Below, piece by piece: positions 6,230-60,289 of a stretch of DNA of 64,000 nt (the first letter of the stretch is position 1; every line of letters begins with the position of its first letter). The stretch is from positions 248,001 through 312,000 of the forward strand of contig CDMY01000275.1 of assembly GCA_001179505.1 (NCBI GenBank), written 5' to 3'. Position numbers and translations under genes: made by a program. Under the pieces are notes generated by a model. That model was not told the DNA's origin, searched no databases, and saw nothing but the letters and a program-made list of their open reading frames with translations. Origin of the DNA: Vitrella brassicaformis CCMP3155. Taxonomy: Eukaryota > Protista > Chromerida.

Positions 6230-6415
6230 TTTGCGCTAGTTTGCCGCCAAGCGTTTAGATTGCCCGCGTAAACTCTCTGCCCCTGGGAAAGGGGGGAGCC
6301 ACGCGTGCGCGCATATGTATAGGTACACACACAGAGTACCGTTTTGTCCCTTTACCTCTACATCCCATCCCATACATCCATGCACCACACCCCTGCCTCC
6401 AATCAGTCTGTCTGT

Positions 6416-9400: not shown

Positions 9401-10707
9401 GGGTCGTGTGTGCACACACTCACGCGTCATGTGGCTTCTTGATGCGCATGAAGGACGGCGAGGGGACGGCGTCGGCATCCACACCCAGCAGTGCCTTCAA
9501 CTCAGAGCTGTGGAACCTCAACCCGCCCGTCGCACCTGCGCCACACGCAGACACGCACAAACACACACGCGTCCTTTCCCTCTCCCTCTGTCCCTCCCTG
9601 CGTCATGATGTGTGAGTGTGCTGACCCGGCCTCACTGCATCCCACTTGGCCTTGAGCTCCTCTGACACGAGCGACGGCTGGTCATTGCCGTTGGCTGGTG
9701 CGAGCGTAGGGTGGTGCTGGGCGTCGAGACCATAGTCGGCCAGTAGTGCACCGATGCGGGAGGGAGGGGAGGGGTCGGTGGTGGTGGGGTTGAGGTTGGC
9801 CTGCTCGAGGGTCGGCATGCGATGCTCAGCTATCTCACTCACATGCTGCGCACCAGTGCCCTGAACCACACACACAACACACACACACACACACACACAC
9901 GCGCGTCGACGGCGCACCCGCCCGCTCTCCCCACGTCACGTTGCGTACCGTCTCGTTGTGCGCACAGGAACTCACTTGGCCGCCGGGGCGACGACCTTCC
10001 GCACTCTGCACCAACTAACCCACCGACACACACGGTTTTCACGAGGTGGTTGCTGTGGTGGGTACATGTATGTATGTGTTGTGAGTCTGTCTGGCTAACC
10101 GCAAATATATATACCATGAAACGGGTATCGAGGCCAGGGATGCGCACAGGCAGGGGTGCCTCACCGCTGCTCGAACTGCCAGCGACTGATGGAGTGGAGG
10201 GAATGCAGCACACCACGTGCACACAAGAAATTGACGCATCCATCCACACATCCGTTGCGGTTTGTGGTGTGGGTGGGTGAGGCACCCACCTGGTGCTGCA
10301 GCAGCAGCAGCAGCAAGTGCCTGCAGGCCAGGCATGTCGTCCGGCAGCAGGCCTTTCCCACGCAGTTGTTCTAGCTCCTCCATGTTCTCCAGACAGGTGC
10401 GCCTCTCCTGCACCATCCATCCATCCGTCACACGCGGGCGGCCGCACAGCCATGTGCTGTGCTGCGCACCTCAACGCCGTGCGCATAGATGCATGCGCCG
10501 CCCCTGTAGCAGCCGCCTGGGGTCTGCAGCACTCAGCACAAGACCAACATAACCAAGCAGCGGCGGCCGGCACATGGATGGATGTTCGTGCAGCTTTCTG
10601 TGCACTGTTGTATGTGCGCTGACATGGAAGAAGTTGCAGTCGTAAGTCTTGTAGACCAACGGCTTCCAGAGAAGTCCAGCCTTGATGGCCGCCAGCAGTC
10701 CACTCAT
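6416..10707 (-). CDS. CCCH zinc-finger, coiled-coil and C-terminal RING-finger protein (multi-exon; start uncertain)
   Basis: Spliced N-terminus VYKTYDCNFFH/TPGGCYRGGACIYAHGVE (C-x8-C-x5-C-x3-H). Coiled-coil exons (ALMEEERILRLALQELQRRNDE; IETLEHDKQSAEDNVAKAKKE; KYKKLAAVARDAEQRNRDLENQ). RING: KCSSC...VIQPCGHLVCGACQ...CPIC. Basic tail ends at the stop at 6416. Confidence 0.7.
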
Positions 10708-11084
10708 CGGAGGGAACACAGCAAGGGTAGAAAGCGGTTGGTGCGCGTTGCAATGACAATGTTTCACGAGGATCGTTAGGGCATTGATGCGAACTTATCA
10801 ATTGGAAGTTCGCCACCATGCCACCACGTCACCATTGCATTGTCGAGTAAGCGATCGTCAAGTCAGGAGGGTCACATCAATGAACCAACCAACGGGCCAA
10901 TGCACACATGTCCTGTCCTGTCTTGTCCTGTCCTGTAGATTGAATGAATGAAATGACGGACAAATAAGTCCAGCGACACACACGCGACACACACGACATG
11001 CAGGCATGCAGGCATGCATTGATGTACGTAAGTCGGCCAGTCAGTCACCCAGCCACCAACCCGAGATGGCCCCACGTGGCTGAC

Positions 11085-12964
11085 TCACTCCTTGTCCTCG
11101 CCGTCCTCCCCACCATCGCCGTCCTCCTTGCCGTTCTCCTGGTGTGTCGCCTTGGCCTCCTTGGCCTCGCCCTTCTCATCCACCTCGGCCCCATCCTCGC
11201 CCTCGACCTCGTCCTCGGGCACGTCCTCGCCGATTTCACCCATCGTCTCGTCCTGCAAGACAAGACGCAGCCGCGACGCGTGTGAGCGCTGTAGTGTGCG
11301 GTGTGGTGGTGTTCGGGCGGTTTTACCTGTTCCTCATCGCTTTCCTCCTCTTCGTCGCCCTCTTCGTCCTCGGCCTGCAGTGCAGTGCAGCCGAATGTTG
11401 GTGGGATGAGTGGATCGTGTGAGTGCGGTTTGGGGCATCTATCTCACCGCTTCCCTGAGGAGCTCGTTGAGGTGGCGCTCGTCCTCACCGCCAACCACGA
11501 TGATCTGATAAATGGATGGATGGATTGATCAGTCGATGCACACATAACATAGGCAAGGGGGAAACTGCCAGTGTCCATGCTGTCTGCTATGTGTAGCCCA
11601 CCCACCTCGGATTTCTGCACGAATGTGCCTCCCCGTCTTGTGATCTCATCCTTCACCAAATCCATCGCCTGGTGGCCACACAGACAGATAGATAGACAAA
11701 TAGGCAGCAACACCACAATACGTTTATGTGTGTAGGGCGTGATGTTTATGAGTGAGAGGGAGTGGAGGGGGGGTGCGGACCTCTTTCATTTTCTTCATGC
11801 CGAGTTGTCTGTCGAGGCATGAGCCGATGAGCACGTACTGCGGGGGCGCTATCAGCTTCACTGACATCTCCATCTCCTGCTGTGTACGTATGGATGGAAG
11901 TAACATAGATGGACACGATGTCGCCAGCCGCCTCAAGGCGTTTTTTGGTGTCGTTTCTGTGTGCGCGTACCCCCTCTGTGCTGATGGTGTGTGCCTTCAT
12001 GAGAGCGTCCTTGACGGCGGTGACGCCCTCGTAGCCAAAACAGCACACATCCAATCGCACCCTGCACACACCACAGCACAGCAGCCACGGACGGGCACAC
12101 ACACATACAGTGAGTGAGTGGGTCATCCATCGATGTGCGGTGCGTTCCCTGCCCTGACCTCAGTTTGATGGCTTGTGGCGTGAGTCGCCTCTTGATGTCA
12201 GAGAGGAGGGCCTCCTTGACGTCCTCGGCCACATCCAGACCACCAAACACCTCATCGGGCTCCGCGACGGCCTCCTGAACACAGCATAGGAACACATCAA
12301 TGTTCACACATAGATGTGGGTCGATCCCTCGATGGCTGTCTGCCTGTATACATACCTTGAACGCTTCATGTGCGCTGCCATATTTTCTGTCGAGAGGCCA
12401 TGTGACGCGGCTGTTGAGCTCGTCGACAGTCATGCCCTTGGTCTGCATCCGCCACACAACACGCACATCCACATCCACAGGCGAGTCGAGTCGTGCAGCG
12501 CACCTGAGCGACGTGTCTGACGATGGTCTGCACGAGTTTGGCAATCGAATACTTCTCCTCACACTTGACAATGTCCTCTGGGGACACCCTGCATAGCATA
12601 CACGCATCCAGTGCACACACAGCAAGACACCCCGCCCTGTCTGTCTGTGTGACATGGCTGGCTGGCCCACCCACCTCCTCTTTGACAGATCGATGTATCC
12701 CTTTGACTCGTCGACGCGTAGCACCATGACGACCTCTGTCTTGCCCACCCGGATGAGCTTCGACACAGATCTGAACCGCCGCTTGGAGAGCTCAGACATG
12801 AGGATCATGCCCTCGATGTTGTTGTACTCGAGCAACGACACGTACGCTCCCATGTCGGCTATCCGGCGCACGATCACCATCACCAAGTCATCCGGCTTCG
12901 GGAACCGCTGCTCGTAGAACCGGCAGTCGCCCAACGAAGCACGCACGAACGGCTCACTCGCCAT
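11085..12964 (-). CDS. EIF2S1: Eukaryotic translation initiation factor 2 alpha subunit
   Basis: CRFYEQRFPKPDDLVMV...GAYVSLLEYNNIEGMILMSELSKRRFRSVSKLIRVG...KGYIDLSKRR, including the regulatory Ser in MSELS. Later exons RLTPQAIKLR and VKLIAPPQYV; long acidic tail. Confidence 0.97.
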
Positions 12965-13594
12965 GATGGTGGTCTGGATGCGCTGATACTTGCTTAAAAC
13001 GCGGGACTGCTCACGAGATCTTCGGGACTGCAGCTGCTAGCTACGAGTGCTGTTCAAGGCAACGTGCCTCGGACCTCTCCAACCTTTGCGGAGATCTTCG
13101 CGAATAAGCACTGCTACCTACGAAGCGGCCCACGAGACGCGAGAGCTACAGAGCTTCCGGGGGACGTTGCGTTCAACAAATCGGTGAGTCAATCAATCAA
13201 TTCATACGAGAGCCGGAAAGCAATGCACGTGACGTGCTCACTACAAAACCGACACTGAGACAACACCGTTCATGCAATTAATGTGCTATCTTCCGTACGT
13301 CTGTCTACCATGGACGTACGTGTGCACAAGGCACACAGACAACCACTCGTTTCGCTCACTAACTAACGCACAAACCAATCACACCACACCAACGTAGATG
13401 CACTTTGACAGCACAAGACAAGACCAAAGGCTGCGCACCGCACCTGGCTATGTTTTGCCATCGATCGATCGTCGCGGCCTAGATAGACTTGATGGATGAC
13501 CCTTCCTTCCCCTTGATCTCATGCATACCCTACCTACTACACCCCTACTACAAAAACCGCCCGCCGTACCGCATACCACATCACATGCAGTCAG

Positions 13595-14788
13595 TCACTC
13601 CGCAAAGGTGACAGAAAAGAACAGGAACTGAGTGAATTGCTCACGGTCGAAGTTGTTGTCAGACACAAACACCAGCAGGTGTCTGCCGTCGGCCAACTTG
13701 GGCCCAAGTGTCATGCCCTCCACGTTGTCGAGCTCTATGCCCAGCTGGTCGAAGTCAAACACCAGCGTCTTGTCCACAGCCAGCGAAGCCAAGTCGGGTG
13801 TCTCCTCAACAGCCGGCAGCGACTCGAACAGGCGGCGAAGAGTCCTGTGAGCCGGAAGGTCGACGTGTATCTCGTACAGCCGGACCTTGTTTCCCTTGCC
13901 GACCGAGAAGCTCCGCTCGAGGGCCAGAAACGACCCCTCGTTGTTGATAGCCAGCAGCTCCACAAGTCCGGTGGTCGAGAACTCGTCAGCCGGCTCCGGC
14001 TCCTCGGCGATGGGATCGGTATAGTAAAAGTCCTCAGCCACGGGCAGGTGAGTGCGGAGGTCATAGATGAGTATGCGGCACAAAGTCCCCTCTGAGGTGG
14101 TGGGTGCCGGGCCGTCTTGGAAGAGCGCATTCTCGGTCGCTGTGATGAGCCACTTGCGGTCTGGCGTCACCGTGAGGCTTTCAAAAGCGGCGTTGTTCCT
14201 GACGCCACTGGACTCGTCGGCCGTGGGCAAGTAGGGGTGGGGGACGAACAGGTTCTTGTCCTGAGTGCCGCCAAGCGAGAAGGACCGCACAGAGGGGTCG
14301 ATGAGTTCGGTCTGGACGCCCTCCTCAGCCAGGAACAGCTCGTGGGGGCCCACCAACGTCAGGCCCTCGGGATCCAGCTCCTCTGGCGCGAATGGAGGCT
14401 GGCCCTCGCCGGCTTTGAGGAACGTAACGCTGTTGAACTGGACGTCGATCTGAGGGCCGTCTGCCGCGTCATCACTCACATCAATACCAGCCGTGTACCA
14501 GCGGTAGTCCTTCCGGTCGTCCGAGAGTGTGTAGTACAGCTCCCTGCCGTAATCGTATGTGATGGCCGAGAGACCGCCGACCTCCGTGCCGTCAAGCTGA
14601 AGGCCTGCACACACACAACACGCAGCAGCCGGTTTCTGTCAGGCGCCTTCCTCTGCACCCCGTACGATACCTGTTTCGAATATCTTCTCTCCGATGAAAT
14701 GAATCGATGCCACACGGTTAGCCTGTCCTTCTGTTGAGAAGAGGAGGGAAGCAACAGCGGAAAGGACGACAAGGTTGGAAGGCCGCAT
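13595..14788 (-). CDS. Secreted phytase-like (esterase-like activity of phytase family) beta-propeller protein
   Basis: Signal peptide MRPSNLVVLSAVASLLFSTEG; one intron (14670-14605). Motifs GTEVGGLSAITYD, TLSDDR, LDPEGL, RNNAAFESLT, GLVELLA, LALERSF, LDNVEGMTLGP and FVSDNNF are typical of this family. Confidence 0.85.
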
Positions 14789-15112
14789 GGTGTGAGATCT
14801 GTCGGGGAGATCTTCCTCTGGTGTGGGCGGAAAGGATGGGCACGGGCGTCTTCGGTTGTCAACAAGTGCCAGGAACCGCAAACGCTTGCATGCAAGATCG
14901 CACGTTCCAGGACGCATTCCAAAGGCCGACAAACATAGAGATCTGTCACATGCTCATTCTCCCTCTTCCATCGGCGCCCGCAGGATGTTGGGGGGAGGCT
15001 GTGCCGGTCCATGCGATCCACGAAAAGCTCGCCAAAAGAGGGGATGAAGAAAGGAGGAAAAAAAGCGAGTGGATAGCGTTGTTGAGTGTTGGGTGACTCA
15101 TCGATAGCTTAG

Positions 15113-16248
15113 ATGAGTCACTTCAGCCGGCCGCCAGCCTCGTCAGCATTGGTGCCGCAGGGCAGCGGCAGGAGGAAAGGCAGGACGCGCGCAGACATCA
15201 CAGAGGAACAGAAAAGCGTCAGCAACGACACCACACCCGCTGCAACCATGGCGTGGCCTGCAGACTCATGGAATGGACGGGTGTGCATCATGTTTTATCC
15301 AATGCAGGAGATCAAGGAGGCGTTTGATCTGTTCGACACGGACAAGAGCGGCAAAATCGACTACCACGAGCTCAAAGTAAGCGTACACAGGGAGAGTGTG
15401 AATGCATCCCATCCCATCCGAGCCAGCCAGCCAGCCATTCGTTGGTTTTGTTGGCTGGTGGTTCGTTCGTGTCAGGTAGCGATGCGTTCGTTGGGTTTTG
15501 AGGTCAAGAAGGCTGACGTGTTGGAGCTCATGAAGGAGTATGACAAGACGGGCAGCGGACAGATCGACTACAACGACTTTCTGGAAATAAGTGAGGCAGC
15601 TGCCTGCACACAAGACACGCCAGGCTGACGCGACGATTGATGCCCTCCCTTTTCGTCTTGCATGTGCAGTGACGACCAAGACAGCCGAGAGGGATCCGAA
15701 CGAGGAGATCCGCAAGGCGTTCAAACTCTTCGACGACGATAACACAAGTAGGGCGACGGAGATGCGGCTGCATACAGTGCCTACCTATGGGATGGGTGTG
15801 TTTGTGTCTGCTGCAGACCGCATATCGCTCAAGAACCTCCGGCGTGTCGCTAGGGAACTGGTGGGAGGGGGTGGGTGGGTGCGCACAGGATACACACAAG
15901 GGGGAGGGAGGCATCTTGTCTGTCTGATCGATCAATGCATTGGATGGGATGGCTGCTGGGTGGATGGGATTGGATGGATGGATGGGTCGATACATGCATG
16001 TGTGGTGTGCACTCTGTGGATGTCATGTGATGTGATGTGTTAGGGTGAGAACTTGTCCGATGACGAGCTGCAGGCCATGATAGACGAGTTCGACAAAGAC
16101 ATGGACGGCGAAAGTAAGACCGATCCAATCCACACACATGAAAAGTGGCTGTTTGCCCAACTCGCTGTGTGTGTGTGTGTGTGTTTTGGTTCATTCAGTC
16201 AACGAGGAGGAGTTCCTCTCTATCATGAAGCAGACCAGCCTCTATTGA
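15113..16248 (+). CDS. CETN3: Centrin (centrin-3/Cdc31-like EF-hand protein), 6-7 exons
   Basis: [46 protein letters not shown]...[20 protein letters not shown]...[52 protein letters not shown]. The [10 protein letters not shown] and KKADVL motifs are centrin-3-like. Confidence 0.92.
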
Positions 16249-29250: not shown

Positions 29251-32200
29251 TCATTCACCGCCAGTGTCGGTGAGTACGTCGAGCAGCCACTTGACGTCGG
29301 CACAAGGGGCCCTCTTCAGCACTGACATGACCTCCATCCTCTCGTGTCCCATCGCAACGGCATCCCGAGCAGTACTCAGCATCTGAACGAAACAAGGAGA
29401 CTGTCGCGCCGGCAAAGGCGGTGCCAATTCACCTGCATGCGCAAGAATGATGGCATGGTGGCATCGTCGAAGGGAACGCTCATGCTTTCGGCATCTTGTC
29501 CCTCGCTCTGGTGTCTTGACACGGATCTGCTGCGGCCCCTTCCCCTTCGCTGCGTTCGCCGATCACGCGTGTGTGTTTTCTGGACGGGCTTGGTTCTCGA
29601 TGGCTTGATGGACATGCGCTCGTAGAAGGATGTCATCTCACCTGAATGAAGCGCGGGGAGAGACAGATTTGTGGGAAGGGTTTGTCGTGTAACGTCTGGG
29701 TGGTGTGCCTGGTAGTGAGTTGAGGACATCGGCTGCTATGTTGGGCCCTCGGGAGGGATGGCGGTGCAGAGATACTGACACACAGACACATATGGATTGA
29801 GCATGCATAGATAGGACGTGGCATGCAGATTTGTGTGACAACAACAAGGAAGGAGGTGCGTTGTGCCTTTCTGCTTCTCCACTCACCTCTGTCTGATGCC
29901 TGCCGCATCTCAATGATTTTCGCATCCAAGCCGTCGCCACTCTTCATGCCACCGTGGTCAGTACAGACTGAGGACAGCCAGACAGAGGTAAGTAAGAGGC
30001 AAGTCATCACATCACATCACACAAGCTGCTGCTGCTCGCCTTTGCAACGAGTTCTGCTGCTCTCCTACTTCCTACCTATAGTGATGGATAGAGGCAGGTC
30101 AACGGTTTTCTGTATCTCTTCCTTCGTCAGGTCCCAATCAGAAAGGTCGCTGCAGCACAGCACGACAAATACGCTTGTTTGCACTCATGACACTCATGAA
30201 TGGAGGCTTTGTTGTGTTTGTTGCACACCCGTCCGTAAGTATGAGCAAGACCCAGTACTTCTCGGTGTGCTGTTCTGTGGCAGCCCAGCTGCCTGCGATG
30301 CTGACGATATGCCTCAGCAGTGTGGGGCCGGAAAACCACGTGTGCTTGAGGGCGTGACGGTACGCCTGCAACACACCTACATGCATCCATGGCCATGGAG
30401 GGTGGGAGCGAACGTACAGGAAAAGCGATCGATACACTGATTGCCTCACGCATGTGGCCCGCCTTGTTACATGTGGTATCATACCTTGTGCCCCCCTGAC
30501 CATGGGGCTGAAGTAGCAGCCCTTCAGCGAGAAACAGTGCGATGTGTAGCTGGAGGGCGGCAGCCTGTCAGGACACACAACACAACACAACCCACGCACA
30601 AACAAGACACATGGACTCAGCCGAGAGGTAAGCTGAAAAACACGCAGGCAGATTCGCTTCCTTTCTTTACTTGCTTCCAAATCCGTACGGAGCGATGAGG
30701 CCATTATCTGCGGTTTCCGGCCGCACACAGAGGACGTGTCTCTCTCTGATGCGTGTATATGTGGATGTACCCAGGTAGCGGTGCATGACCGTGGCCACTT
30801 CCTCCACGCACTGCTCATAAGCGTTGCCGCCCTCCTCCTCATATCGGTGCAGCGACGCACCGTTGACTGGCGGCCTGTTACTCTGCGTCATGTCGATGGC
30901 CACCAAGAGACCCAACTTCACACCCGAGTGGATAAAATCCAGGAAAGTCACTCTGCAAGCACACGACAGAGAGAGAACACACAGGATCTTCCACAGACGC
31001 ACAATGATCGTGTCTCTTCTTTTGCATGGTGTGTATGATGGTTCCCACCGCTTCTCGAATTCGATTTTCTCTATCTGCGCTTTGGCCTGTGTACGATGAA
31101 GGCCATTGCGCTGGCTCAGTGCGAAGACAGAGGCTTTGATGGATATGCTATACGCCAGACAGACAGACAGACAGACGCGGTGATAATTCTTCCCACCCAA
31201 TGTTGCTTCCTTCCCATCCACCCACCCGGCGACAGAGCATTTCTTGAGAGCACCGCATGTGACCATCGCCACAGTCAGGTGCTTGCACATCGGCTGCCGA
31301 CACTTGCTGCACACACACACCCTCACAATTAATGGCATCTCTCGGCTGGCTCGGTGCGTCCACGCATCTCACGTTCGATTTTCGAGCGCGCCTTCCTTGT
31401 CTGGTGGGACGTTGCTGGTGTGCATGAGGAGGCCAACGCAGGTCTCGGGGCTGTAGACCGACTTGCCATCCCAGTCGTGAGCCGATACCACCCACTTGAC
31501 CGGCAAAACTGCATGGAAAGACGGCTGCCGGGCCGTCAACACCTCGCTGGTCAGCACAGGGTGGAAACAAGACGCTGCTCGCGATGCGTCCACGCGGTCC
31601 AGGGCGTCTTCTGCGGCATCAGGCCCTTGGTCCCTTATCTGTTTCCGCAGCTGCTCGTCCACACACTTGCACACCGAGATGACACAGCTGTCCCCCCGCC
31701 GGGCGAAGGGGGGGCGTATGTGCATGCTGATGAGGTCGTTGCTGCCCTTGGCCTCCACGCAGCGGACATCGATCTCGATGAGCTCGTCGTGCCTCTTAGC
31801 TTTGTGCTTGGCCCGCATCGACACAAAGTAGTCATCCTCATCCTCGTCCTCCTCGCCTTCTGCCTCGTCTGCGTGGCGGGCAGGGGTGGCCTGGGTGGTG
31901 TGTGACGGCCGTAGGGGCAGAGTGAGGGTGCCGCTGGCCACCAGGTGAGACACCTCGCACTCAGCCTCAGCAGAGAACAGCCGCTCGCCTGACGGCTGGG
32001 AGGCGCTACTCTCCTCATACAAATCAAACCTATACATACATGCGCACAGAAAGAAGGCGCAGTGGGAGTGACCCTTGCCCGAGCGCGTGCTCTGTGTGTC
32101 CCCCGGGTCCGCTTCCTCCGTCCGCATGAATGCATTCACTCATGCACCGTAGGTGTTGTGTGGCGTTGAATCGGTAGAGGGCCACGGCGAGGGGCTGGAA

Positions 32201-32601
32201 GTCCAGGCTCTGCCGGTTGGTGTCCACAGACGCCTGTCTCGCGGGGCCCAGGGAAACCCACTCCCCCTCATCAGATTCTGGCGGACAGAAAGAGTTCATG
32301 TGACCGTGCGTGCGATGATGCAAGGCGCACATGGCTGACCTGTTCGGATGGCCACGGCACAAAATACACGCCGAATGGAGCCTTTCTGTACGGTGGGGTC
32401 GAAACAGCTGACGGAGAGCTCAATGCGGCTGGTAGCCTCGGACAGATCGTCATATCCTTGGCGTCTGTCAGTCGCACAACCAGGCTTCTCATCCGCATCC
32501 GTGTTGTTGTCCTGGAGGTCTTCATCGTCATCCGGAGCGTATGGCTTGACCTTCGACTTATTCCTGCCGAGCACACCGCGGCGGCAACACACCTGACCCA
32601 T
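29251..32601 (-). CDS. Copine (C2 domains plus vWA/copine domain) with an N-terminal acylation motif and a C-terminal UBA-like segment
   Basis: vWA motifs: VTFLDFIHSGVKLGLLVAIDMTQSN, SLH, NAYEQ, YGFG, GVLQAYRHALKHTWFSGPT, YWVLLILTDG, LPLSITIG. N-terminus MGQVCC. Last exon AVAMGHERMEVMSVLKRAPCADVKWLLDVL. Confidence 0.85.
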
Positions 32602-32708
32602 CGTTCTCGAGAATATAAGAGAGCCCGCCTTCGCTGAGACGCGGAGGCTGGGGGCTGGCCCCCACGTAAATATTGAGTGCGGTTTCCCCGCCCGGCTGCG
32701 CCTTGGGC

Positions 32709-32927
32709 AGTAGTACTTATACAAGGGATTTCCAATACTCGCTTCGCTCGCATTGAAAATCCCTTGTATGGGTTTTTTGGGGTTGTAGGGTTGCAAACCG
32801 AGAAACCCCAGAGAGAGGGAGTATTTTGACGAGGAGTGAATGTGCGTTCACCCTGTGGTCAGTACGCAGACGTATATATGTATGTCCTTCAGTCATTTAG
32901 TTGGCCATCGTCCATCAGATCGTCCGA
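32709..32927 (+). repeat. Left terminal inverted repeat (74-bp perfect core, imperfect to about 220 bp) with internal hairpin
   Basis: AGTAGTACTTATACAAGGGATTTCCAATACTCGCTTCGCTCGCATTGAAAATCCCTTGTATGGGTTTTTTGGGG; internal 13-bp stem at 32719-32731 / 32757-32769. Confidence 0.95.
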
Positions 32928-33169
32928 AAAAATGTATGTATGTCCAGACAGACAGGCAAAACAGACACACACAGACAGACAGGCCGACACGACAGACATA
33001 CACGCATCTACGCATCAGTCCCTCCCTCCCTCCCATTAAGCACGTGAGCACGCATCGGTCATCTATCTCACCCGCCTCTCTCCCTACGTATTAAACGTGC
33101 AGACAAGCACGTATGAAGTGATGTCGGCTACTCATATCTAATCACGCATTCACCAAAGAAGCACACAGC

Positions 33170-33540
33170 AGTGTGTTCCCTTTCCCCACTCACAAAGCAC
33201 GCCATGTATCCATACAAAGCACGCAATGTGTTCCCCTTTTGCGTCCATGCAGCGAGAGTAGGGAAGGCAGTATGTGTCCTTCCCTTCTCCCATCCACGCC
33301 ACGCAAAGCACGCATCAAGCGAGCACAAGAAAAACAGGCAACACACACGCCACGCGTTATATTCTCCTCTCCCCATGCACGCAAAGCATGCAGTGAGTTC
33401 CCTTTTGCATTCATGCAGCGAGAACAGGGAAAGCAGTATGTGTCTTCCCCTCCCTCGCCCACGCCACGCAAAGCACGCATCCAGCGAGCACAAGAAAGAC
33501 AGGCACCATTTACGGACACGTAGAAAAAGCACACCCCTCT
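33170..33540. repeat. Degenerate tandem duplication, period about 166 bp, inside the element
   Basis: CATGCAGCGAGA...GCAGTATGTGTC...CCACGCCACGCAAAGCACGCATC...AGCGAGCACAAGAAA.ACAGGCA occurs at 33246 and again at 33412. Confidence 0.8.
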
Positions 33541-33666
33541 CCCCCCATTGAGTGTCACTCACATGTCCATCTCTATACGTACGAGGCTCGTACGCAAAGC
33601 AAGTAGCCTGCGTCTGTCTGTACGCCAAGCTCTTACTTCTGTCCGTCCATCGGTCACCAATAATCA

Positions 33667-34044
33667 TCAACCTACATACACATACACGCACGATGCACAC
33701 AACGCTCCTTCCTCCCTCTGTATCCCACCTCTCCTGAGGAAGCTGAGGATAGGGGCTTCCTTGTCCTCGTTGGGGGTGAAACTGCCGTCTTGAATAAACA
33801 CAGCAAGTTGATTCCACGTGAGGGGGTGGAAGTTGAACCCCTCTTCATCATGTGGACAGCTGAGTAATACGTGGGTGTTGTTCTCATCCTCCATATCAAC
33901 CAGTAGCAGAATATCCCCTTTGGTGGTGTGTTTGCCGATGACAATAGGCACGACTTCCTTCTCTTGCATCTCAGCGAGGTCGTCCGACTTGGTGGTTTTC
34001 GCCCTCTCCTTCTCGCCAGTCTTCTTCTGAAAGGAGTTGCCCAT
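33667..34044 (-). CDS. Cargo ORF A: small intronless hypothetical protein (MGNSFQKK...)
   Basis: Complex, non-repetitive 125-codon reading frame (EVVPIVIGKHTTKGDILLLVDMEDENNTHVLLSCPHDEEGFNFHPLTWNQLAVFIQDGSF), divergent from ORF B. Confidence 0.55.
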   Translation of the reverse strand: MGNSFQKKTGEKERAKTTKSDDLAEMQEKEVVPIVIGKHTTKGDILLLVDMEDENNTHVLLSCPHDEEGFNFHPLTWNQLAVFIQDGSFTPNEDKEAPILSFLRRGGIQREEGALCASCVYVYVG

Positions 34045-34246
34045 TGTGAATTGAGAGAGGGAGAATGCGGGGCACAGGAGGGTTGCGGGATGGCAGATGC
34101 GAGCGAGAGGGGCTGGCAGGGAGCCGAGAGGGGACGCTGGGAGGCCGAAACAACAGCGGACGCCAGTGTGTCCGGTTTTTTGCGAGCTTGAAGCCAGTGC
34201 GAGCTTTGCGATCTTGAAGCCAATGCGAGCTTTTGGGCGAAGACCG

Positions 34247-34732
34247 ATGCCGGGAAAGCGAAAGCATAAGACTGACGCTGATGATGTTGACGTAGAGCAA
34301 GAAAGCATGAACGGCGGATCTGAGAGTGCGAGTGCCAAAAGCGAGGCCAAACCGAAGAAACGTGGACCAGGTCGTCCACCAAAGAACAAGCCCGAGGAGC
34401 AGCCCAAGCCGGAGGCGGAGATGGAGGATGAGCCAAAGAAGGACACGAAGGCCATGAGGATCTTGAAGAAGTTGATGCAAGTCGAACAAGACCTCACCAC
34501 GGCCGAGGAGACGAAGAGATCACACGAGGAGGAGGTGCAGAAGTGCAAGGACGACATCAACAAGCTCAAGCCGAAGAAGCAGAAACTAATGGACGACCTG
34601 TTCGAGGCAAACAACCAAGAAGACGCCCTTGCTGCTGCTGGCACACTCTCGGGTCAGGAAGCCGCCGCCGCTGCTGGCGGACAGAAGAACGGGGACGGGG
34701 AGGGTGAGGGCAACGGAGAGGAAAACAAGTGA
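34247..34732 (+). CDS. Cargo ORF B: intronless AT-hook plus coiled-coil protein
   Basis: MPGKRKHK (NLS-like), KKRGPGRPPK (AT-hook-like GRP core), coiled coil AMRILKKLMQVEQDLTTAEETKRSHEEEVQKCKDDINKLKPKKQKLMDDL. Confidence 0.7.
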   Translation: MPGKRKHKTDADDVDVEQESMNGGSESASAKSEAKPKKRGPGRPPKNKPEEQPKPEAEMEDEPKKDTKAMRILKKLMQVEQDLTTAEETKRSHEEEVQKCKDDINKLKPKKQKLMDDLFEANNQEDALAAAGTLSGQEAAAAAGGQKNGDGEGEGNGEENK

Positions 34733-35149
34733 GGGCGGAGATGGGGTGCGTGAAGGCGGGCAGGGATGGTGTATGTATTTCATCTGTGCGTATTGACTAA
34801 CGACCCTCTTTTTCTATGACGTTCCGTCTGTACGTGTTGACCTCTGACCCGTTTGTGTCCTCATAACGATGTACACACGCACGAGCACTCTCTCTGTCTC
34901 TCCGTGAATCGACCGACCCAGAACAGCGTGTGAAAGCAAAACTGGTGCCTGCCTACATGCACACATCCACACGGACACGTAATATTGACAGACAAAACGG
35001 GCAATCGCATTCACACACAGATAAAAGGCACGATGCACGTGCAGTCACGAGCCGAAAAAGCTATGTGTGTGTGCGTAGATAAAGCTCATGAGTAGTCGCA
35101 GGCACTGCAATATGCTACATCATGTGAGGCCTTTGGGAAAATGGCACTC

Positions 35150-35430
35150 ACTCGCTTTCTCCTCCCTCACCCGACACACGCACTCGCTCCCACCCCACGG
35201 CACACGCACTCGCTCCTTCACCCGACACACGCACTCGCTCCCTCCTTCACCGCACACGCACTCGCTCCCTCCCTCCCTCCCTCACCCGACACACGCACTC
35301 GCTTCCTCCTTCACCGCACACGCACTCGCTTCCTCCCTCACCGCACACGCACTCGCTCCCACCCCACCGCACACTCACTCCCAGCCCACGGCACACGCAC
35401 TCGATCCCTCCCTCACACGCACACGCATTC
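35150..35430. repeat. Minisatellite of roughly 25-30-bp units (CACACGCACTCGCTCCCTCC...TCACC) inside the element
   Basis: About 9 imperfect tandem copies of CACACGCACTCGCT(C/T)C. Confidence 0.85.
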
Positions 35431-35455
35431 CCTCCCTCCCCAACTCATGTGCTGC

Positions 35456-36452
35456 TCACTGGGTGAGGTCAACAACGCTGCTGCTGCTGGCGGTGTTGGT
35501 GGTGGTGGTGTTGGTGGGCGTGTTGTTCGTGTAGATGTCCGACAACAACAAACGCCGACGGCAGAACGAACACTTGCGGTAGAGTGTCGTAGTAAACACT
35601 GCACAATCCTCACACACCTTGGTCTGGCAGCAAGGGAGGGTGATGAACGCCGTCTAAGGCTTGGCGTTATAGCAGGTGACACACTCGACCAACTCGGGCT
35701 GCTGGTTGTTGGTGCCGTTCGTATCATACACATAGACACACACATCACACACATGCTTCTCGCTGTATTCACCTGCATCAGTGTGCCATCCAGTGCTGCG
35801 ACGATCGAGTCGTGGTTGTCGGGCGTGTCCACACACCATCCATCCTTGATACGCGCACGCTTGATGATGGTCAGTTGCTGCAAACACACACACAACACAG
35901 AGATGAACACCTTTGCACGCCGATGGGATGCTGTGCTGTGCTGTGTTTTCTCACCTCATCAAACGCTTCCAGCATGCACTTCGCACAAACAAAGCCCTTC
36001 TTGCCCGTGTGCTTGCTGGCCGTGAACTCCAACACCGACGCAAGCAGTGGGTTGTCGGTTGTCGTCTTCCACTTGGTGGGGATGTGGTCGGCACACACAC
36101 GAGCCGATCTGGTGCCGTCACGACACCGAGGCGAACAGCACACGATGCTGGTCTTGGTGAGGGACTTGGAACACCCGCCGGTGATGTCATACACGTCCTT
36201 GTGCATCACGCATGGCTCTCCCTCGATGTAGCGATACGTGTCGCTCGTGTTGACGAAATTGAGGAAGGCGGTGTTGCAAATCTCCTTGACCATTCCGTCA
36301 GGGTGCTCTATCATGCCGTCCTTGCTCTTGCCATCGGCGAGGGGTGCGTGGAAGTGCGGACAGAACGTGATGGGCGTTGTTTGCCCACCAAGGTTGATAG
36401 TCGAGGTCTCACGCCACCCGAGAGGGGGAAAGTCCGTGCGTTTGGGAGCCAT
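35456..36452 (-). pseudogene. Cargo gene C: Cys-rich protein with a C-terminal RING finger interrupted by an in-frame TAG
   Basis: Exon 1 MAPKRTDFPPLGWRE...CAKCMLEAFDE, two GT-AG introns, last exon PELVECVTCYNAKP*TAFITLPCCQTKVCEDCAVFTTTLYRKCSFCRR. TAG at 35654-35656; natural stop at 35456. Confidence 0.7.
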
Positions 36453-36530
36453 GAGGAGGGAGGGAGAGTCGGCTGTCTTGCGAGCTTACAACTGAGCTTG
36501 CTACGCCTTTCTGCCACTCCATCTGCCAAG

Positions 36531-36553
36531 AAATCCCTTGTATAAGTACTACT
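36531..36553 (+). repeat. Orphan internal copy of the element's right terminus (23 bp)
   Basis: AAATCCCTTGTATAAGTACTACT is identical to 38756-38778 and in the same orientation. It is followed by CATCAG, not by the TSD. Confidence 0.9.
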
Positions 36554-36672
36554 CATCAGGTGGGTAGACGAAGCAAAAGCAATCGAGAAACACACAGATC
36601 CGTTGACATCGGTGTCTGTCTGTGTGTGTGTGGTTCAGGGACTGCCGGTGAGAGATCTGTTGCCCTGTGACG

Positions 36673-38321
36673 ATGGAGGCCGAGTTGGCCGCTCGGCGGT
36701 TCAGCGCTCGTGCGATTCTCAAGGAGCTGCACGTGCCCGTGACGGCCATCGGTGACGCCATCAGCCAGCTGCACACACAGGTCCGCCAGGCTGACGAGGC
36801 CGCCCACGTGGCCGCCCAGCGAAAGAGGCAGCAGCACGGCGCATCGGACCCCTCGGCGGCCTCGCGTGACGACACTTTGGTGCTGAATGTGGGCGGCCAT
36901 CTGATGAGCGTCAGGCGGCAGCACGTGACTCAGGGAGAGGGGGTGGAGGGCACTCCGCTGGCGGCCCTCTTCGGGGGCTGCTGGGAGGACCGACTCATAA
37001 AGGACGACAGCCAGCGGGTGTTCCTCGACATCTGCCCGGAGGCCTTTAAGGCCGTTCACAAGGCCATCCTCAATGCCGAGACCCTTCGCAGCGCCGGCAA
37101 GGCGGCGTCGGTCGGCCACCTGCTCAATAAAGTGGCCAAGCGCGACAAGGGTGACGGCAATAAAGGCGATGACACAGTCTTCTCGTTTCGTCATTTTGCC
37201 TTTGGCTGCCTGTGTGTGGTGTGTCTGTCAGGTCGCCATGGCTTCTGGGTCAAGCTGTTGATGACGCCTCTCAACAAGGATCGCCCATCGGCGAGGATGC
37301 GGCAGACGCGGCCCCCTGTGCCCCGGCTGGCGGCCACTGACATGCCTTCCGGCAGCGGCGACACAGTCAGGAAGCTCGAAGGCATTATAAGGGCATACGC
37401 CGCCGAGAGGGCCCGGCTGGAGGGACAGCTGCGGGCCGCCGACAAACGACGCGACAATCTCGACAAAGAGATAAAGGTGACGATATGAGCAGAGGTGGAG
37501 GAAGAGGCCGTTGGTCTGATGGTTGTGGCTGTGTGTGTGTGTCAGGCCGTCGAGCCCTTTCTGCTGCCTCTGAGTGGCGGCGATACCATTCGGTCGGTCG
37601 AGGTGTGTGGTCAGCTCATCTCGACCACTCAGTCCACTGTGGACGAAATGGGCGACATCGCACTGGCCAACCGATTTGACCTGTGAGCCCATCACACCAA
37701 CACACTCAGGACACACTGATGTGTTTCTCACTGCTTGTGTGCCGTCAGGTGGTCCAGCAGCCGAGCGGTGGAGGTGGTGGATCCCGACCACATCGGCCGC
37801 ATGGTCGCCGTCTACCGCAGAAAGCGACTCGGCGCCTCGCCGGCCGACATGGCCGCCGTCCTGACGATGGCTGGCAAGACGGACCAGCCGCCATTTGACG
37901 TCAACGCGGCCATGTACGGCATTGTCAAGACCGACACACCCACACCACAGGCCAGGTGAGACCCAACAGGGAGCAGACAAGAGCAATTGGCCATCTTTGT
38001 TGCATTCTTTTCAGTGTCGGCCGTCGGACCGGCACATTGCCGTCTGGTTGTCGATATGAGGTGGTGCAGGAGGGCTACGGCGGCAGAGTGCCCACACTTT
38101 CTATCGACACCGTCGAGTACGACTACATTGGGTGGCGTGATGGATTCGACGGCCGGGACAAAGCATTCGATTACCGTGGGGATGTGGGTCGTTTGTCCGA
38201 TCTGGATGGGTGGCTGAAAACGGCGTTGTTTTGGATGAGGGAGGGGGAGGTCAGACGATTCAGACTGCCAGACGAAAATCACGCCCCCTACCGTCAGCTG
38301 CACTTGATCAGCATAGTGTAG
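36673..38321 (+). CDS. Cargo gene D: BTB/POZ (KCTD/T1-type) protein with a second degenerate BTB-like part and a degenerate C-terminal FKBP-like domain, 4-5 introns
   Basis: BTB: LVLNVGGHLMSVRRQHVTQGEGVEGTPLAALFGGCWEDRLIKDDSQRVFLDICPEAF. Second repeat: IRSVEVCGQLISTTQSTVDEMGDIALANRFDLW. FKBP-like: TLPSGCRYEVVQEGYGGRVPTLSIDTVEYDYIGW...GWLKTALFWMREGEVRRFRLP. Confidence 0.75.
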
Positions 38322-38551
38322 GAGAGAGAGAGTGCACACACACACAGATGGGGGCGGCTCTGTCTGTGACACACACTCATGTGTGAGGCCGGGAGCCCTC
38401 CCTCGTCGCCTGGCTGACTGTGGGCTTTGGTTTTGAGCGATGGAGTGAGTGCGTTGGCTGTGTACTGTCCAACGGCAGCGAGGGGGGGGGATTTTTATCA
38501 CATCGTTGATGTTAAGGTGTGTGTGTCGCCTCTCTCCCCCCCACCTATATA

Positions 38552-38778
38552 TCGAACGATCTGATGGACGATGGCCAACTAAATGAATGAAAGACATACA
38601 TATATACGTCTCGTACTGACCAGAGGGTGATTTCATACTCACAAAGCTTTAAAAGAAAAATCTCAAGGGTTTACACCTTGGGTCAAGGGTTTGGAACCCT
38701 GAACCCCCAAAAAACCCATACAAGGGATTTTCAATGCGAGCGAAGCGAGTATTGGAAATCCCTTGTATAAGTACTACT
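38552..38778 (-). repeat. Right terminal inverted repeat
   Basis: 38705-38778 is the exact reverse complement of 32709-32782. 38552-38630 is about 90% identical to the reverse complement of 32848-32927. Contains AGGGTTTGGAACCCT at 38686-38700. Confidence 0.95.
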
Positions 38779-38833
38779 TTGGGCGGATGCCCGAGCCACC
38801 GCCAGGGGCAGATCTGTAGTACTGCGCCGGAAA

Positions 38834-40205
38834 TGGAGGTCCATCAGGCCGACCGTGTATCTCCCTTCGTTGCCTTCCTAGTCAACACACAGGAGGTGAG
38901 AGATCTCTGCAGCATTACCCATTGCAAATATGCCGTGTGTGTGGTGATGCGTTCTGTCAGGACATGTGCGGGCTCATTTGTTCATTCCTTGTCGCCAAAG
39001 ATCTCGCAGCCCTCACCACCAGGCGAGTATCATCAGCTACCGATCTGCTTTTGTCATATATGCAATGGATGGATGGATGGATGGACTGACGTGCTTTTTG
39101 CAGTTGCGCCCGTTGCCACGAGGGTCTGTGGTGTAGCGCTCCCTTCTGGCATTGTTTCTTTGCCCAGCTGAACATCGCCCCCCCCTCCCCCCTGTCGTCA
39201 CCCATCCTGCCGCCGTCGCCCCTCAGCCCCCCGTCATCCACCAGCGCATCATCCGCCACGCACACACCACCTCTCTCACCGCTGCGTGAGGTGGTATCGG
39301 CGTCGCATCTGGTGGGAGCGGGGTCTTTGTTGCCGACCTCATGTGGGGATGGAAGGCGACTGGTGAGCGGGGGGGGGTGGGGGTGGGGGTAGAGGGACAG
39401 AAGGGGGAAGGCTCACTCACACACTGTATGTATGTGCGATTGTATGTAGGTGCGGGCACTATCGACACCGTGTGGATGCCGTCGGCACCGACGAGCCGCC
39501 GGACGTCTATGGCCAGCTGTTCGACACGGCAAAGTGAGTGATTGAGCTAATCGCCGGCCGACCGACCCCCACCCACCCCCATCAATGTGTATGTCGCATA
39601 TTTAGGCGCTATTTGCGTGGCCTGCTTGGCCGCGACGACCCTGGTTTGCTGCACCGATTCGGCAATGCATGCCTGGGACTGGTGCGCAAATACGACAGCT
39701 ACGATGACCACACACAGGTCGGCATATCCCAGGAACGGAGAATTGGGCATTCATTCGTGTGTGTGGGGGGTGCACTGCACGTATACGCATACATGCAGGC
39801 GGCGGCAGAGGACATGGTGTGGCAGATAAGTCGAAGGACGGACATCTTCACACGTACATCAACAAGCGCCTCCTTTTGTGTCTCCTCAAACACTCCGAGT
39901 GTCAATGTTTCCATGCGGGGGTGTCAGGGGGCCATGCGTTGGAGATATGTCGCGTCTTTGAGGACAGAAAGGAGCGCCGCATCATACAGAAAGCCATGGA
40001 CCACGTCGCCATCATATTCTTGGCAAGTCAACCCACACACGGCAACAGACCTCTCGATGTATATGTGCCCATGCAGGATTCGGAGGAGAGTTTTGACGCG
40101 TTGCTGGAGCACCAGTACGCCATGCTGGCGCAGCAGGACCGATCACCGCGCACATGCGAGGAGGCACTCGCCGATATGCCATCCATCCACACACCACACA
40201 CATGA
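38834..40205 (+). CDS. Hypothetical multi-exon protein (some Cys/His clusters)
   Basis: Exons flanked by GT-AG: MEVHQADRVSPFVAFLVNTQE; CGHYRHRVDAVGTDEPPDVYGQLFDTAK; RYLRGLLGRDDPGLLHRFGNACLGLVRKYDSYDDHTQ; GHALEICRVFEDRKERRIIQKAMDHVAIIFLA; DSEESFDALLEHQYAMLAQQ. Confidence 0.55.
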
Positions 40206-55824: not shown

Positions 55825-55930
55825 GTCTACAGAGGCGAAGAAGATCGTGAATGCCCCAGCGGCCTTCCCCTTCCCCTGAGCGGGTGGGTTGGCCGCTGGG
55901 GCATTGACGATCTTCTTCGCCTCTGTAGAC
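55825..55930. repeat. 106-nt near-perfect hairpin (40-bp arms, 1 mismatch, 26-nt loop)
   Basis: GTCTACAGAGGCGAAGAAGATCGTGAATGCCCCAGCGGCC (55825-55864) pairs with GGCCGCTGGGGCATTGACGATCTTCTTCGCCTCTGTAGAC (55891-55930). Confidence 0.9.
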
Positions 55931-59311: not shown

Positions 59312-59989
59312 GAATGATCGCAGACAGACACAACGCGACGGATAAATGCACCTCGAAAGAGACTGACTGACAGACGGAGGGACGGATGCTTCATCTTCGT
59401 ATGTGAAAGACCCCAGTGTGTGTACGTGCACTCCACGTGTGAGTAAATATCAATGTGTGCATGGAACGCTGATTGATGCATTGAGGGCCACACGTTTGCT
59501 TGTCCGACGAGTAGTCCACAAATATTCATTCATCACCAACACACACACACACACACACGCGCACACGCACGAACACACAATCGATGTCTGTCTGTCTGTC
59601 TGTCTGTATATGACATATATATAGGTCTCTGTCTGTATTCACGGCAACAAACGCCTGAGCTCCGCTCCCTCGCTCGCTGCCACTCGGCAGCAAACAAACA
59701 AACATACAAACCGACTACCTATATAGGGGGGGGAAACTGTCATTAACCGTAACACTCGTCTGTGTGTCCGTGATACTCATACAAATACAGTCCCATCAGC
59801 ACGCAGAGTCAAACAGGCTCAAGGGGAGGAGGGATCAATCCCCGCCCCATCAGCACACCCCAGTCCCGCAAACCCTCCCCTCCCTCCCCCACGCAGACAG
59901 AAGCTAGTCGCACGCGCGAGGGCGATAGACAAGCGAGAGCGAATCCATCCAGACACATGACTGAACCCCCGACCCTTCCACCCCTCCTT

Positions 59990-60289
59990 NNNNNNNNNNN
60001 NNNNNNNNNNNNNNNNNNNNNNNNNNNNNNNNNNNNNNNNNNNNNNNNNNNNNNNNNNNNNNNNNNNNNNNNNNNNNNNNNNNNNNNNNNNNNNNNNNNN
60101 NNNNNNNNNNNNNNNNNNNNNNNNNNNNNNNNNNNNNNNNNNNNNNNNNNNNNNNNNNNNNNNNNNNNNNNNNNNNNNNNNNNNNNNNNNNNNNNNNNNN
60201 NNNNNNNNNNNNNNNNNNNNNNNNNNNNNNNNNNNNNNNNNNNNNNNNNNNNNNNNNNNNNNNNNNNNNNNNNNNNNNNNNNNNNNNNN
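59990..60289. other. Assembly gap (300 N)
   Basis: Run of N that interrupts the apparent 3' end of the USP gene. Confidence 1.

What the first reader, a model, noticed from the sequence alone, without database searches (positions are those of the whole stretch)
32703..38784. Cargo-loaded, non-autonomous Polinton/Maverick-like element with perfect TIRs and a 6-bp TSD
Seen in sequence: perfect 74-bp inverted repeats starting 5'-AGTAGTAC, inverted homology extending to about 220 bp, and the identical hexamer TTGGGC immediately outside both ends of a 6,070-bp segment. Established knowledge: 6-bp TSDs, long TIRs and AG/AGT-repeat termini characterise Polinton/Maverick elements, which use a retroviral-type integrase and a protein-primed polymerase and are normally 15-20 kb. 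Here no integrase, pPolB, ATPase, protease or capsid is recognisable; there are four unrelated genes instead. Inference: a Pack-MULE-like, gene-carrying non-autonomous Polinton derivative mobilised in trans. The zero-mismatch TIR core and intact TSD suggest a recent insertion. I do not recall such gene-shuttling mini-Polintons being described in chromerids.
Basis: partly seen in the sequence, partly recalled or inferred. Interest (0 to 1): 0.9.

Follow-up and report, generated by a model that had tools for sequence, protein, structure and literature searches.

The report
Gene-carrying Maverick-type mini-element in Vitrella
A 6-kb piece of DNA in the alga Vitrella brassicaformis has the end sequences and insertion scar typical of virus-like Maverick/Polinton transposons but none of their enzymes. 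It holds a copy of a host gene plus a third, inner element end, which may be a trace of how such elements pick up host genes.

Summary
Window 32709-38778 (6,070 bp; Vitrella brassicaformis CCMP3155, contig CDMY01000275.1) has inverted ends identical over 74 nt and the hexamer TTGGGC on both sides. The wider 220-bp inverted homology is patchy: 100%, then 46%, then 89%.

New evidence:
- A metagenome contig from a Vitrella relative carries the same left end (94% identity), starting at the same first base but in different flanking DNA.
- The ends read 5'-AGTAGT...ACTACT-3', an end motif published for vertebrate Mavericks that have 6-bp duplications.
- A third exact 24-nt terminus lies inside, at 36530-36553.
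- On its left is an 800-bp gene fragment. Its two paralogues in this genome sit next to a protein-primed polymerase and a retroviral-type integrase.
- Immediately to its right begins a full-length copy of a host BTB-family gene, 86% identical in DNA to a paralogous locus.

No polymerase, integrase or capsid domain lies inside the element.

Verdict: most likely a non-autonomous, composite Maverick/Polinton-type element inserted by an integrase supplied in trans. The class assignment is circumstantial, because no autonomous copy with these ends could be searched for. Whether the BTB gene ever moved with the element is unproven. I rate it a new variant of a known kind, of moderate interest.

The parts
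32703..32708 (.). Left copy of the 6-bp target-site duplication, TTGGGC
   Evidence: Read directly; identical to 38779-38784.
32709..32927 (+). Left terminal inverted repeat (219 bp). It starts AGTAGTAC; the first 74 nt are identical to the right arm; the subterminal hairpin is about 32719-32769.
   Evidence: arm identities; hairpin fold. 94% identical to the end of L006.
33234..33508 (.). Two copies of a ~165-bp tandem duplication in the left arm
   Evidence: families D15, D16, 87-88% identity; also present in L006.
33667..34044 (-). Small gene A (annotated 106 aa; starts MGNSF). No family match. Shared with the second copy.
   Evidence: annotation; P0018, 88% aa, on L006; Ka/Ks about 0.53 over 107 codons; no Pfam.
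34247..34732 (+). Small gene B (annotated 161 aa; charged, AT-hook-like motif, coiled-coil-like). Diverges from gene A across about 200 bp.
   Evidence: A homologous but much diverged copy, with the AT-hook motif kept, is in L006. No database relative found.
35162..35440 (.). Array of ~25-27-bp tandem repeats (about 10 copies)
35456..36452 (-). Cys-rich gene (P0001, 256 aa, spliced). Only 35728-36528, i.e. its 5' flank and most of its coding part, matches the paralogues. The 3' end is replaced by unrelated sequence (one truncation or rearrangement).
   Evidence: The paralogues P0002 and P0003 lie beside DNA_pol_B_2 and rve ORFs in L001 and L002.
36530..36553 (-). Inner, third copy of the element terminus (exact 24 nt, right-end orientation). 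It sits between the Cys-rich gene unit and the BTB unit.
   Evidence: 0 mismatches, 0 expected by chance.
36554..38456 (+). Host-derived unit holding a full-length BTB/K-channel-tetramerisation-type gene (P0005, 457 aa, gene 36673-38321) with 119 bp of 5' flank and 135 bp of 3' flank
   Evidence: 86% nt identity to L004 9887-11776 and 85% to L005, with homology starting exactly at 36554. At least 9 Vitrella paralogues. 80% aa identity and collinear with P0007.
38552..38778 (-). Right terminal inverted repeat (227 bp)
   Evidence: Only 78% identical to the L006 end, although its first 74 nt equal the left arm.
38779..38784 (.). Right copy of the target-site duplication, TTGGGC

Best explanation
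Window 32709-38778 is a non-autonomous, composite mobile element of the Maverick/Polinton type in Vitrella brassicaformis. It encodes no replication, integration or capsid function.

Shown:
- It has Maverick-type ends, 5'-(AGT)2...(ACT)2-3', inside 219/227-bp inverted repeats, and a 6-bp target-site duplication.
- It lies in the roughly 230-bp space between two divergent host genes.
- The same end occurs at another site in a related genome.
- A third terminus lies inside the element.
- The DNA to the left of that inner terminus is a piece of an element family that elsewhere carries a protein-primed polymerase and a retroviral-type integrase.
- The DNA to the right of it is a copy of a host BTB gene.

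Inferred mechanism: a retroviral-type (rve) integrase encoded by autonomous relatives elsewhere in the genome recognises the shared terminal about 24-74 nt. It joins the two 3' ends to target DNA with a 6-bp stagger, and repair of the stagger gives the TTGGGC duplication.

Inferred history: the inner terminus is a fossil integration junction. Two routes fit.
(a) A Polinton-like element whose terminal gene is the Cys-rich gene inserted into an older mini-element that already held the BTB gene, and was then mostly deleted.
(b) A deleted element ending at 36553 sat upstream of a BTB gene, and a more distant right end was used together with the left end, so the host gene was carried along.
For: - Ends and duplication.
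- Second copy of the left 1.5 kb, starting at the same base in different flanking DNA (L006, ENA assembly ERZ893784).
- The end motif (AGT)2//(ACT)2 with perfect 6-bp duplications is the published Maverick signature (PMC8097293). A 6-bp duplication and long inverted repeats are typical of Polintons (PMC3014272), and rve integrases typically give 6-bp duplications (PMC12220804).
- The inner terminus is exact over 24 nt.
- The 35728-36528 unit is 89-93% identical to units in L001 and L002.
- L001 and L002 share a longer repeat that runs from this unit into the integrase region, plus polymerase segments.
- Those loci give Pfam DNA_pol_B_2 at 55-56 bits (cut-off 25.8) and rve at 45 bits (cut-off 32.6). 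The integrase also matches retroviral integrase cores in the PDB.
- In all three loci the Cys-rich gene's 5' end lies within about 20-45 nt of the repeat boundary and the gene reads inward.
- BTB homology starts at the base after the inner terminus.
- No core Polinton domain lies inside the element.
- Polinton-like elements of Vitrella are already known from capsid phylogenies (PMC12721341).
Against: - No autonomous element with these termini was seen. L001 and L002 contain no match to the terminus or the inverted repeat, so the link rests on one adjacency.
- L001 and L002 are rearranged, incomplete copies, and no capsid, ATPase or protease gene was seen in the 6-7 kb available.
- The AGT end motif is documented for vertebrates, not protists.
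- A 6-bp duplication is not unique to Polintons.
- Only one full copy and one partial copy are known. The partial copy comes from another organism, so the copy number in this genome is unknown.
- The two arms are only 79% alike overall.
- The terminus was absent from the JGI metagenome and IMG/VR collections.
Confidence: 0.55

Rival explanations
1. It is a non-autonomous cut-and-paste DNA transposon of another superfamily that also makes 6-bp duplications, for example IS3EU, Dada or a Ginger-like group. On this reading it is unrelated to the polymerase/integrase loci, and the Cys-rich gene fragment and the BTB gene are both picked-up pieces.
For: - Inverted ends plus a short duplication are generic features of DNA transposons.
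- No terminus match in L001 or L002.
- A size of 6 kb with no Polinton core gene.
- Woo et al. 2015 list unclassified class 2 DNA in Vitrella and no Maverick.
Against: - The ends are AGTAGT/ACTACT. They are not the TGTNR ends with an RTATAY target that define Ginger2 (PMC2836005).
- The exact terminus abuts a fragment of a polymerase/integrase-linked unit at the unit's own boundary. That would be a coincidence on this reading.
- No transposase domain of any kind was found in the window element.
Confidence: 0.2
2. The two ends and the duplication record a single old integration, and the interior was remodelled afterwards in place by deletions, a nested insertion and ectopic repair that copied in the BTB gene. 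On this reading the present 6-kb unit, including the host gene, never moved and is not a gene shuttle. This rival concerns the cargo claim, not the class of the element.
For: - The only other copy (L006) shares just the left 1.5-1.7 kb.
- No second copy with the BTB gene between such ends was found. The paralogous loci L004, L005 and L007 have no terminus.
- The arms are mosaic.
- The BTB copy is about 14% diverged from its nearest paralogue.
- The polymerase/integrase loci show that elements in this genome do get rearranged in place.
Against: - BTB homology begins exactly at the base next to an intact terminus. That is what an integration junction looks like, rather than a repair patch.
- The BTB gene is full-length with its own flanks.
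Confidence: 0.35
3. It is not a mobile element. On this reading it is a chance or structural inverted duplication, or an assembly artefact, with a coincidental flanking hexamer.
For: Short-read scaffolds with gaps occur in this window (N run at 59991-60289).
Against: - 74 identical nt with 0 expected by chance.
- A matching hexamer has a probability of about 1 in 4096.
- The same end, from the same first base, is present in an independent assembly in a different context.
- No N run lies inside 32703-38784.
Confidence: 0.02

Closest known systems
Maverick/Polinton self-synthesising, virus-like transposons (Kapitonov and Jurka 2006; Pritham et al. 2007; as described in PMC8097293, PMC3014272 and PMC12220804)
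   Same: - Inverted repeats of a few hundred bp, a perfect 6-bp target-site duplication and (AGT)2//(ACT)2 end motifs.
- The same genome holds loci with a protein-primed polymerase and an rve integrase, and these are linked to a gene of which this element carries a fragment next to a terminus.
   Different: - 6 kb instead of 15-20 kb.
- No polymerase, integrase, capsid, ATPase or protease gene.
- The arms are mosaic (79% identity).
- It contains a host gene and a third terminus.
- A shared terminus with an autonomous copy has not been shown.
Cargo-carrying Mavericks/Polintons of nematodes and insects (Widen et al. 2023 and Jeong et al. 2023, as cited in bioRxiv 10.1101/2025.02.07.637071)
   Same: Non-element genes sit between Polinton ends.
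   Different: Those elements keep their core genes and carry cargo as an addition. Here the core is gone, and the host gene sits beside an inner terminus that may mark how it got in.
[quoted passage not shown]
   Same: Multiple Polinton ends, partial copies and host genes are interleaved at one locus. Deletion and rearrangement follow nested or neighbouring insertions.
   Different: In C. elegans the rearrangements are in place and the ends are not a duplication-flanked unit. Here the outer ends form a clean inverted pair with a 6-bp duplication.
Pack-MULEs and macrotransposition by two ends of separate Ac/Ds copies (from my own knowledge of plant transposons)
   Same: As a way of working: host DNA lying between two usable ends behaves as one transposable unit, and non-autonomous elements are filled with host gene sequence.
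   Different: It belongs to a different superfamily: MULEs give 9-11-bp duplications and hAT elements 8-bp. Pack-MULEs mostly hold gene fragments, whereas here the host gene is full-length.
Ginger2/TDD integrase-type cut-and-paste transposons (PMC2836005)
   Same: They use an rve-type enzyme, have a 6-bp target and inverted repeats, and are small.
   Different: Ginger2 ends follow TGTNR and the target is the AT-rich RTATAY. Here the ends are AGTAG and the target is TTGGGC.

Membership tests
Maverick/Polinton | [quoted passage not shown] | tested here: not met
   - No DNA_pol_B_2 hit in 56 open frames of 32709-38778.
- No tblastn match to the polymerase frames of L001 and L002 anywhere in the window.
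- The polymerase is present only at other loci of the genome.
Maverick/Polinton | Encodes a retroviral-type (rve) integrase | tested here: not met
   No rve hit in the element. An rve ORF region is present in L002 at 2825-3877.
Maverick/Polinton | Capsid module (double jelly-roll capsid protein, penton, packaging ATPase, maturation protease) | tested here: not met
   No such Pfam domain in any open frame of the element. The test was by sequence profile only; no useful structure model was obtained.
Maverick/Polinton | Terminal inverted repeats of about a hundred to several hundred bp | tested here: met
   Arms of 219 and 227 bp. The first 74 nt are identical and overall identity is 79%.
Maverick/Polinton | 6-bp target-site duplication | tested here: met
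   TTGGGC on both sides. Only this one copy has both ends visible.
Maverick/Polinton | End motif 5'-(AG)3 or (AGT)2 ... (CT)3 or (ACT)2-3' | tested here: met
   The ends read AGTAGT...ACTACT. The motif is as published for vertebrate Mavericks (PMC8097293). Whether it applies to protist elements is unknown.
Non-autonomous derivative of a given autonomous family | Shares its terminal sequence with an autonomous element in the same genome | not testable with these tools
   - No tool searches the Vitrella assembly by DNA.
- The two polymerase/integrase loci reached through proteins lack the terminus.
- Indirect evidence only: an exact inner terminus abuts a fragment of that family.
Mobile element in general | The same ends occur at more than one genomic site | tested here: met
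   L006 (ENA ERZ893784, a Vitrella relative) has the left 1.5 kb, starting at the same base, with a different flank. Copy number within CCMP3155 itself was not testable.
Ginger2/TDD | TGTNR termini and an RTATAY 6-bp target | tested here: not met
   The termini are AGTAG and the target is TTGGGC, against the definition in PMC2836005.
Pack-MULE (Mutator-like) | 9-11-bp target-site duplication and Mutator-type inverted repeats | tested here: not met
   The duplication is 6 bp. The flanks beyond the hexamer differ: GCTGCGCC on the left against GGATGCCC on the right. The Mutator duplication length is from my own knowledge.
Helitron | No inverted ends, no duplication, 5'-TC...CTRR-3' ends with a 3' hairpin | tested here: not met
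   Inverted ends and a duplication are present. The Helitron definition is from my own knowledge.

The most novel reading that the evidence does not exclude
The inner terminus may be a fossil of host-gene capture by a Maverick/Polinton-type element through use of an alternative, more distant end. On this reading a deleted element ending at 36553 lay upstream of a BTB gene. The integrase machinery then paired its left end with another right end beyond the gene, so a complete host gene with its promoter became part of a new, enzyme-less mobile unit. That would be a concrete mechanism for how these virus-like elements acquire cellular genes, seen here in a free-living relative of apicomplexan parasites.
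Probability: 0.2. Interest if true: 0.75.

Novelty: new variant of a known kind. Interest (0 to 1): 0.5.

Why it matters
Mavericks/Polintons are known to carry cellular genes and to move them between species, but how the genes get in is not known. Enzyme-less derivatives of these elements are rarely documented, and I found none described for chromerids.

This locus offers a small, fully readable example. It has clean ends, an insertion scar, a whole host gene with its promoter, and an inner element end exactly at the host-gene boundary.

If more copies exist, comparing their interiors could show whether capture happens by nested insertion and deletion or by use of a distant end.

It also adds Maverick-type ends to the very small catalogue of DNA transposons in Vitrella. 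The genome paper lists only about 80 kb of cut-and-paste class 2 DNA and no Maverick.

Tried and rejected
**Searches that found nothing**
- Phage-collection DNA search with the inverted repeat: no match.
- Exact 20-nt terminus scans of JGI metagenomes and IMG/VR: none.
- Relatives of gene A in JGI metagenomes and of the polymerase in IMG/VR: none.
- Protein search with gene B: nothing, not even the annotated protein itself, probably because of its biased composition.
- Exact-product look-ups of ORFs spanning the two outer junctions, and of the unspliced Cys-rich ORF: not on record.
- Rfam on 32000-39500: nothing.
- tblastx of the left arm against the polymerase/integrase loci: only chance-level hits.
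- A search for a duplicate of the hexamer next to the inner terminus (CATCAG): the hexamer is as common as chance predicts, so this is uninformative.

**Leads dropped**
- I first called the 193-aa ORF a C2H2 zinc-finger gene on weak PDB hits. I rejected this because the finger-like stretch lies in an intron that all four homologues lack, including a transcript.
- The AlphaFold model of the Cys-rich protein had pLDDT 35, so no fold search was run.
- The Logan contig L007 starts 12 nt inside the BTB unit, so it says nothing about the junction.
- I dropped Ka/Ks for the BTB gene because it would need joined exons. Per-segment identities are given instead.

Full report
**Source.** The window is from Vitrella brassicaformis CCMP3155, assembly GCA_001179505.1, contig CDMY01000275.1. 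A protein encoded in the finding is 100% identical to NCBI CEL99152.1. Locus L003, fetched around that protein, is window 25456-46452 reversed.

**Observation.**
- The inverted arms 32709-32799 and 38688-38778 are 96% complementary.
- The first 74 nt of the two arms are identical, and both begin AGTAGTAC.
- TTGGGC lies directly outside each end. The unit is 6,070 bp.
- The arms are mosaic: nt 1-74 are 100% identical, nt 75-144 are 46% with a 9-nt indel, and nt 145-232 are 89%, giving 79% overall.
- Each arm contains a subterminal hairpin (family D17, z = -3.8).
- G+C content (52-61%) does not differ from the surrounding DNA.

**A third terminus.** The terminal 24 nt occur a third time, exactly, at 36530-36553 in right-end orientation. 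Chance predicts 0 matches. After nt 24 this copy diverges from the repeat.

**Content.** The assembly annotates four genes inside the element:
- Gene A: 106 aa, 33667-34044, minus strand.
- Gene B: 161 aa, 34247-34732, plus strand.
- A Cys-rich gene: P0001, 256 aa, 35456-36452, minus strand.
- A BTB-type gene: P0005, 457 aa, 36673-38321, plus strand.

They form two divergent pairs. None of 56 open frames of at least 60 aa gives a Polinton core domain in Pfam; only four chance-level hits appear, all with E above 0.002.

The element lies between two divergent host genes. It is 107 bp upstream of a copine gene (29251-32601, minus strand) and 54 bp upstream of a 272-aa gene (38833-40205, plus strand).

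**A second copy of the end.**
- A representative search with gene A found P0018, 88% identical.
- P0018 lies on a 3,023-bp contig of ENA metagenome assembly ERZ893784, fetched as L006.
- Window 32709-33682 matches L006 1786-820 at 94%, and window 33686-34209 matches L006 744-216 at 89%.
- The homology begins at the A of AGTAGTAC, and the DNA outside it is unrelated (it ends ...CCCAGG).
- Gene B continues in L006 in a much more diverged form that keeps the AT-hook-like motif.
- Gene A gives Ka/Ks of about 0.53 over 107 codons.
- The same assembly holds a BTB paralogue (L005), so it contains a relative of Vitrella.

The terminus is therefore real, and the left 1.5-1.7 kb is element content rather than cargo.

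**The Cys-rich unit and the polymerase/integrase loci.**
- P0001 has two paralogues in the genome, P0002 and P0003 (93% and 92% aa), and a relative among MMETSP transcripts, P0004.
- Window 35728-36528 is 93% identical to L001 4367-5151, and window 35754-36528 is 89% identical to L002 369-1113.
- L001 is contig CDMY01000511.1, positions 1-15180. L002 is the whole 5,757-bp contig CDMY01001030.1.
- L001 and L002 share a longer repeat, L001 4367-6915 with L002 389-3083, plus polymerase segments that are inverted relative to each other.
- The two loci encode Pfam DNA_pol_B_2: about 7580-9676 on the plus strand in L001, and within about 4112-5450 on the minus strand in L002.
- L002 also encodes an rve integrase at 2825-3877, minus strand. 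It matches retroviral integrase cores in the PDB.

Polymerase plus rve integrase is the defining pair of Mavericks/Polintons (PMC12220804).

- In L001 the polymerase is read in three open-frame pieces. That means at least two interruptions, which could be frame changes or stops, or unrecognised introns; the two cases cannot be told apart here.
- In L001 only a C-terminal remnant of the integrase remains (one large deletion).
- In L002 the polymerase lacks its N-terminal part (one truncation, next to a retroposon-like repeat at the contig end), and the rest has at least one interruption.
- The L002 integrase is one open frame.
- No capsid, ATPase or protease gene was seen in the 6-7 kb available.
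- A copia-type reverse transcriptase next to the L001 unit lies outside the shared repeat.

In all three loci the 5' flank of the Cys-rich gene ends within about 20-45 nt of the repeat boundary, and the gene reads inward. In the window that boundary is one base from the inner terminus. In the window the homology stops at 35728-35754, inside the 3' part of the gene, and the protein's tail there differs from its paralogues.

L001 and L002 contain no match to the terminus or the inverted repeat.

**The BTB unit.**
- Window 36554-38456 is 86% identical to L004 9887-11776 (contig CDMY01001000.1) and 85% identical to L005.
- The homology starts at the base after the inner terminus.
- L004 and L005 are strongly alike from 3 nt before the same point. 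Further upstream they are only weakly alike.
- The family has at least nine paralogues in Vitrella, at 53-76% identity to the query.
- P0005 is 80% identical to P0007 and collinear with it over its full length.
- Identity by segment ranges from 80% to 93%.
- The loci L004, L005 and L007 show no terminus.

So a complete host-family gene, with 119 bp of its 5' flank, lies between the inner terminus and the right repeat.

**Comparison with what is known.**
- Barreat and Katzourakis report that vertebrate Mavericks have end motifs 5'-(AG)3//(CT)3-3' or 5'-(AGT)2//(ACT)2-3' with perfect 6-bp duplications (PMC8097293). The element here reads AGTAGT...ACTACT.
- Long inverted repeats with a 6-bp duplication are the standard Polinton description (PMC3014272).
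- rve integrases typically give 6-bp duplications (PMC12220804).
- Ginger2 elements also use 6-bp targets, but they have TGTNR ends and RTATAY targets (PMC2836005), which are not met here.
- Polinton-like elements of Vitrella have been used in capsid phylogenies (PMC12721341).
- The genome paper lists no Maverick in Vitrella, and only about 14 kb of 'other transposase' and 64 kb of unclassified class 2 DNA (PMC4501334).
- Cargo in Polintons, and Polinton remnants that reshuffle host genes, are known from animals (bioRxiv 10.1101/2025.02.07.637071; bioRxiv 10.1101/2024.01.15.575659).

**Interpretation.**

Shown:
- A duplication-flanked unit with Maverick-type ends.
- The same end at a second site.
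- No enzyme genes inside.
- A fragment of a polymerase/integrase-linked unit ending at an inner terminus.
- A host gene copy that starts at that terminus.

Inferred:
- Integration by an rve integrase supplied in trans.
- The inner terminus is an old integration junction.
- Either nested insertion followed by deletion, or use of a distant right end, built the present unit.

The identical 74 nt in otherwise diverged arms could reflect selection on the part that the machinery recognises, or copy-correction of the ends during replication. That is speculation.

All three junctions lie 54-119 bp upstream of gene starts. This hints at insertion into promoter regions, but rests on three junctions only.

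**Limits.**
- The Vitrella genome could be reached only through exact protein look-ups, so copy number, other duplications and the autonomous partner remain untested.
- I built no exon-joined model of my own. Spliced proteins were used only as database entries, and the joined step was left out.

Noticed in passing
window 59713-60408 (also L001 from about 10055 and L002 from about 5435): A repeat of about 680 bp, containing an assembly gap (N 59991-60289), is bounded by a 15-nt direct repeat, CGACTACCTATATAG. The same repeat lies beside the polymerase region in L001 and L002. There it is preceded by a T-run, which is poly-A on the other strand. It looks like a non-LTR retroposon with a long target duplication.
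   Followed up: partly
window 55825-55930: Near-perfect palindrome: 45-nt arms, 93% complementary, 16-nt loop (pair I4).
   Followed up: no
L006 1810-1860; L002 about 320-345: Telomere-like CCCTAAA repeats lie about 40 nt outside the element end in L006. Degenerate versions lie just outside the Cys-rich-gene unit in L002.
   Followed up: no
L004 (CDMY01001000.1), several genes; window 38012-38460: The C-terminal domain of about 100 aa of the BTB protein recurs at 73-78% nt identity in at least seven places in L004. This looks like a tandem array of small genes sharing that domain.
   Followed up: no
L001 1888-4080: A copia-type reverse transcriptase fragment (Pfam RVT_2, E = 1e-31) with 508-bp direct repeats nearby abuts the Polinton-like unit.
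   Followed up: no
window, throughout: (GTCT)n, (GGAT)n and (CA)n microsatellites are very frequent in the non-coding DNA of this window.
   Followed up: no
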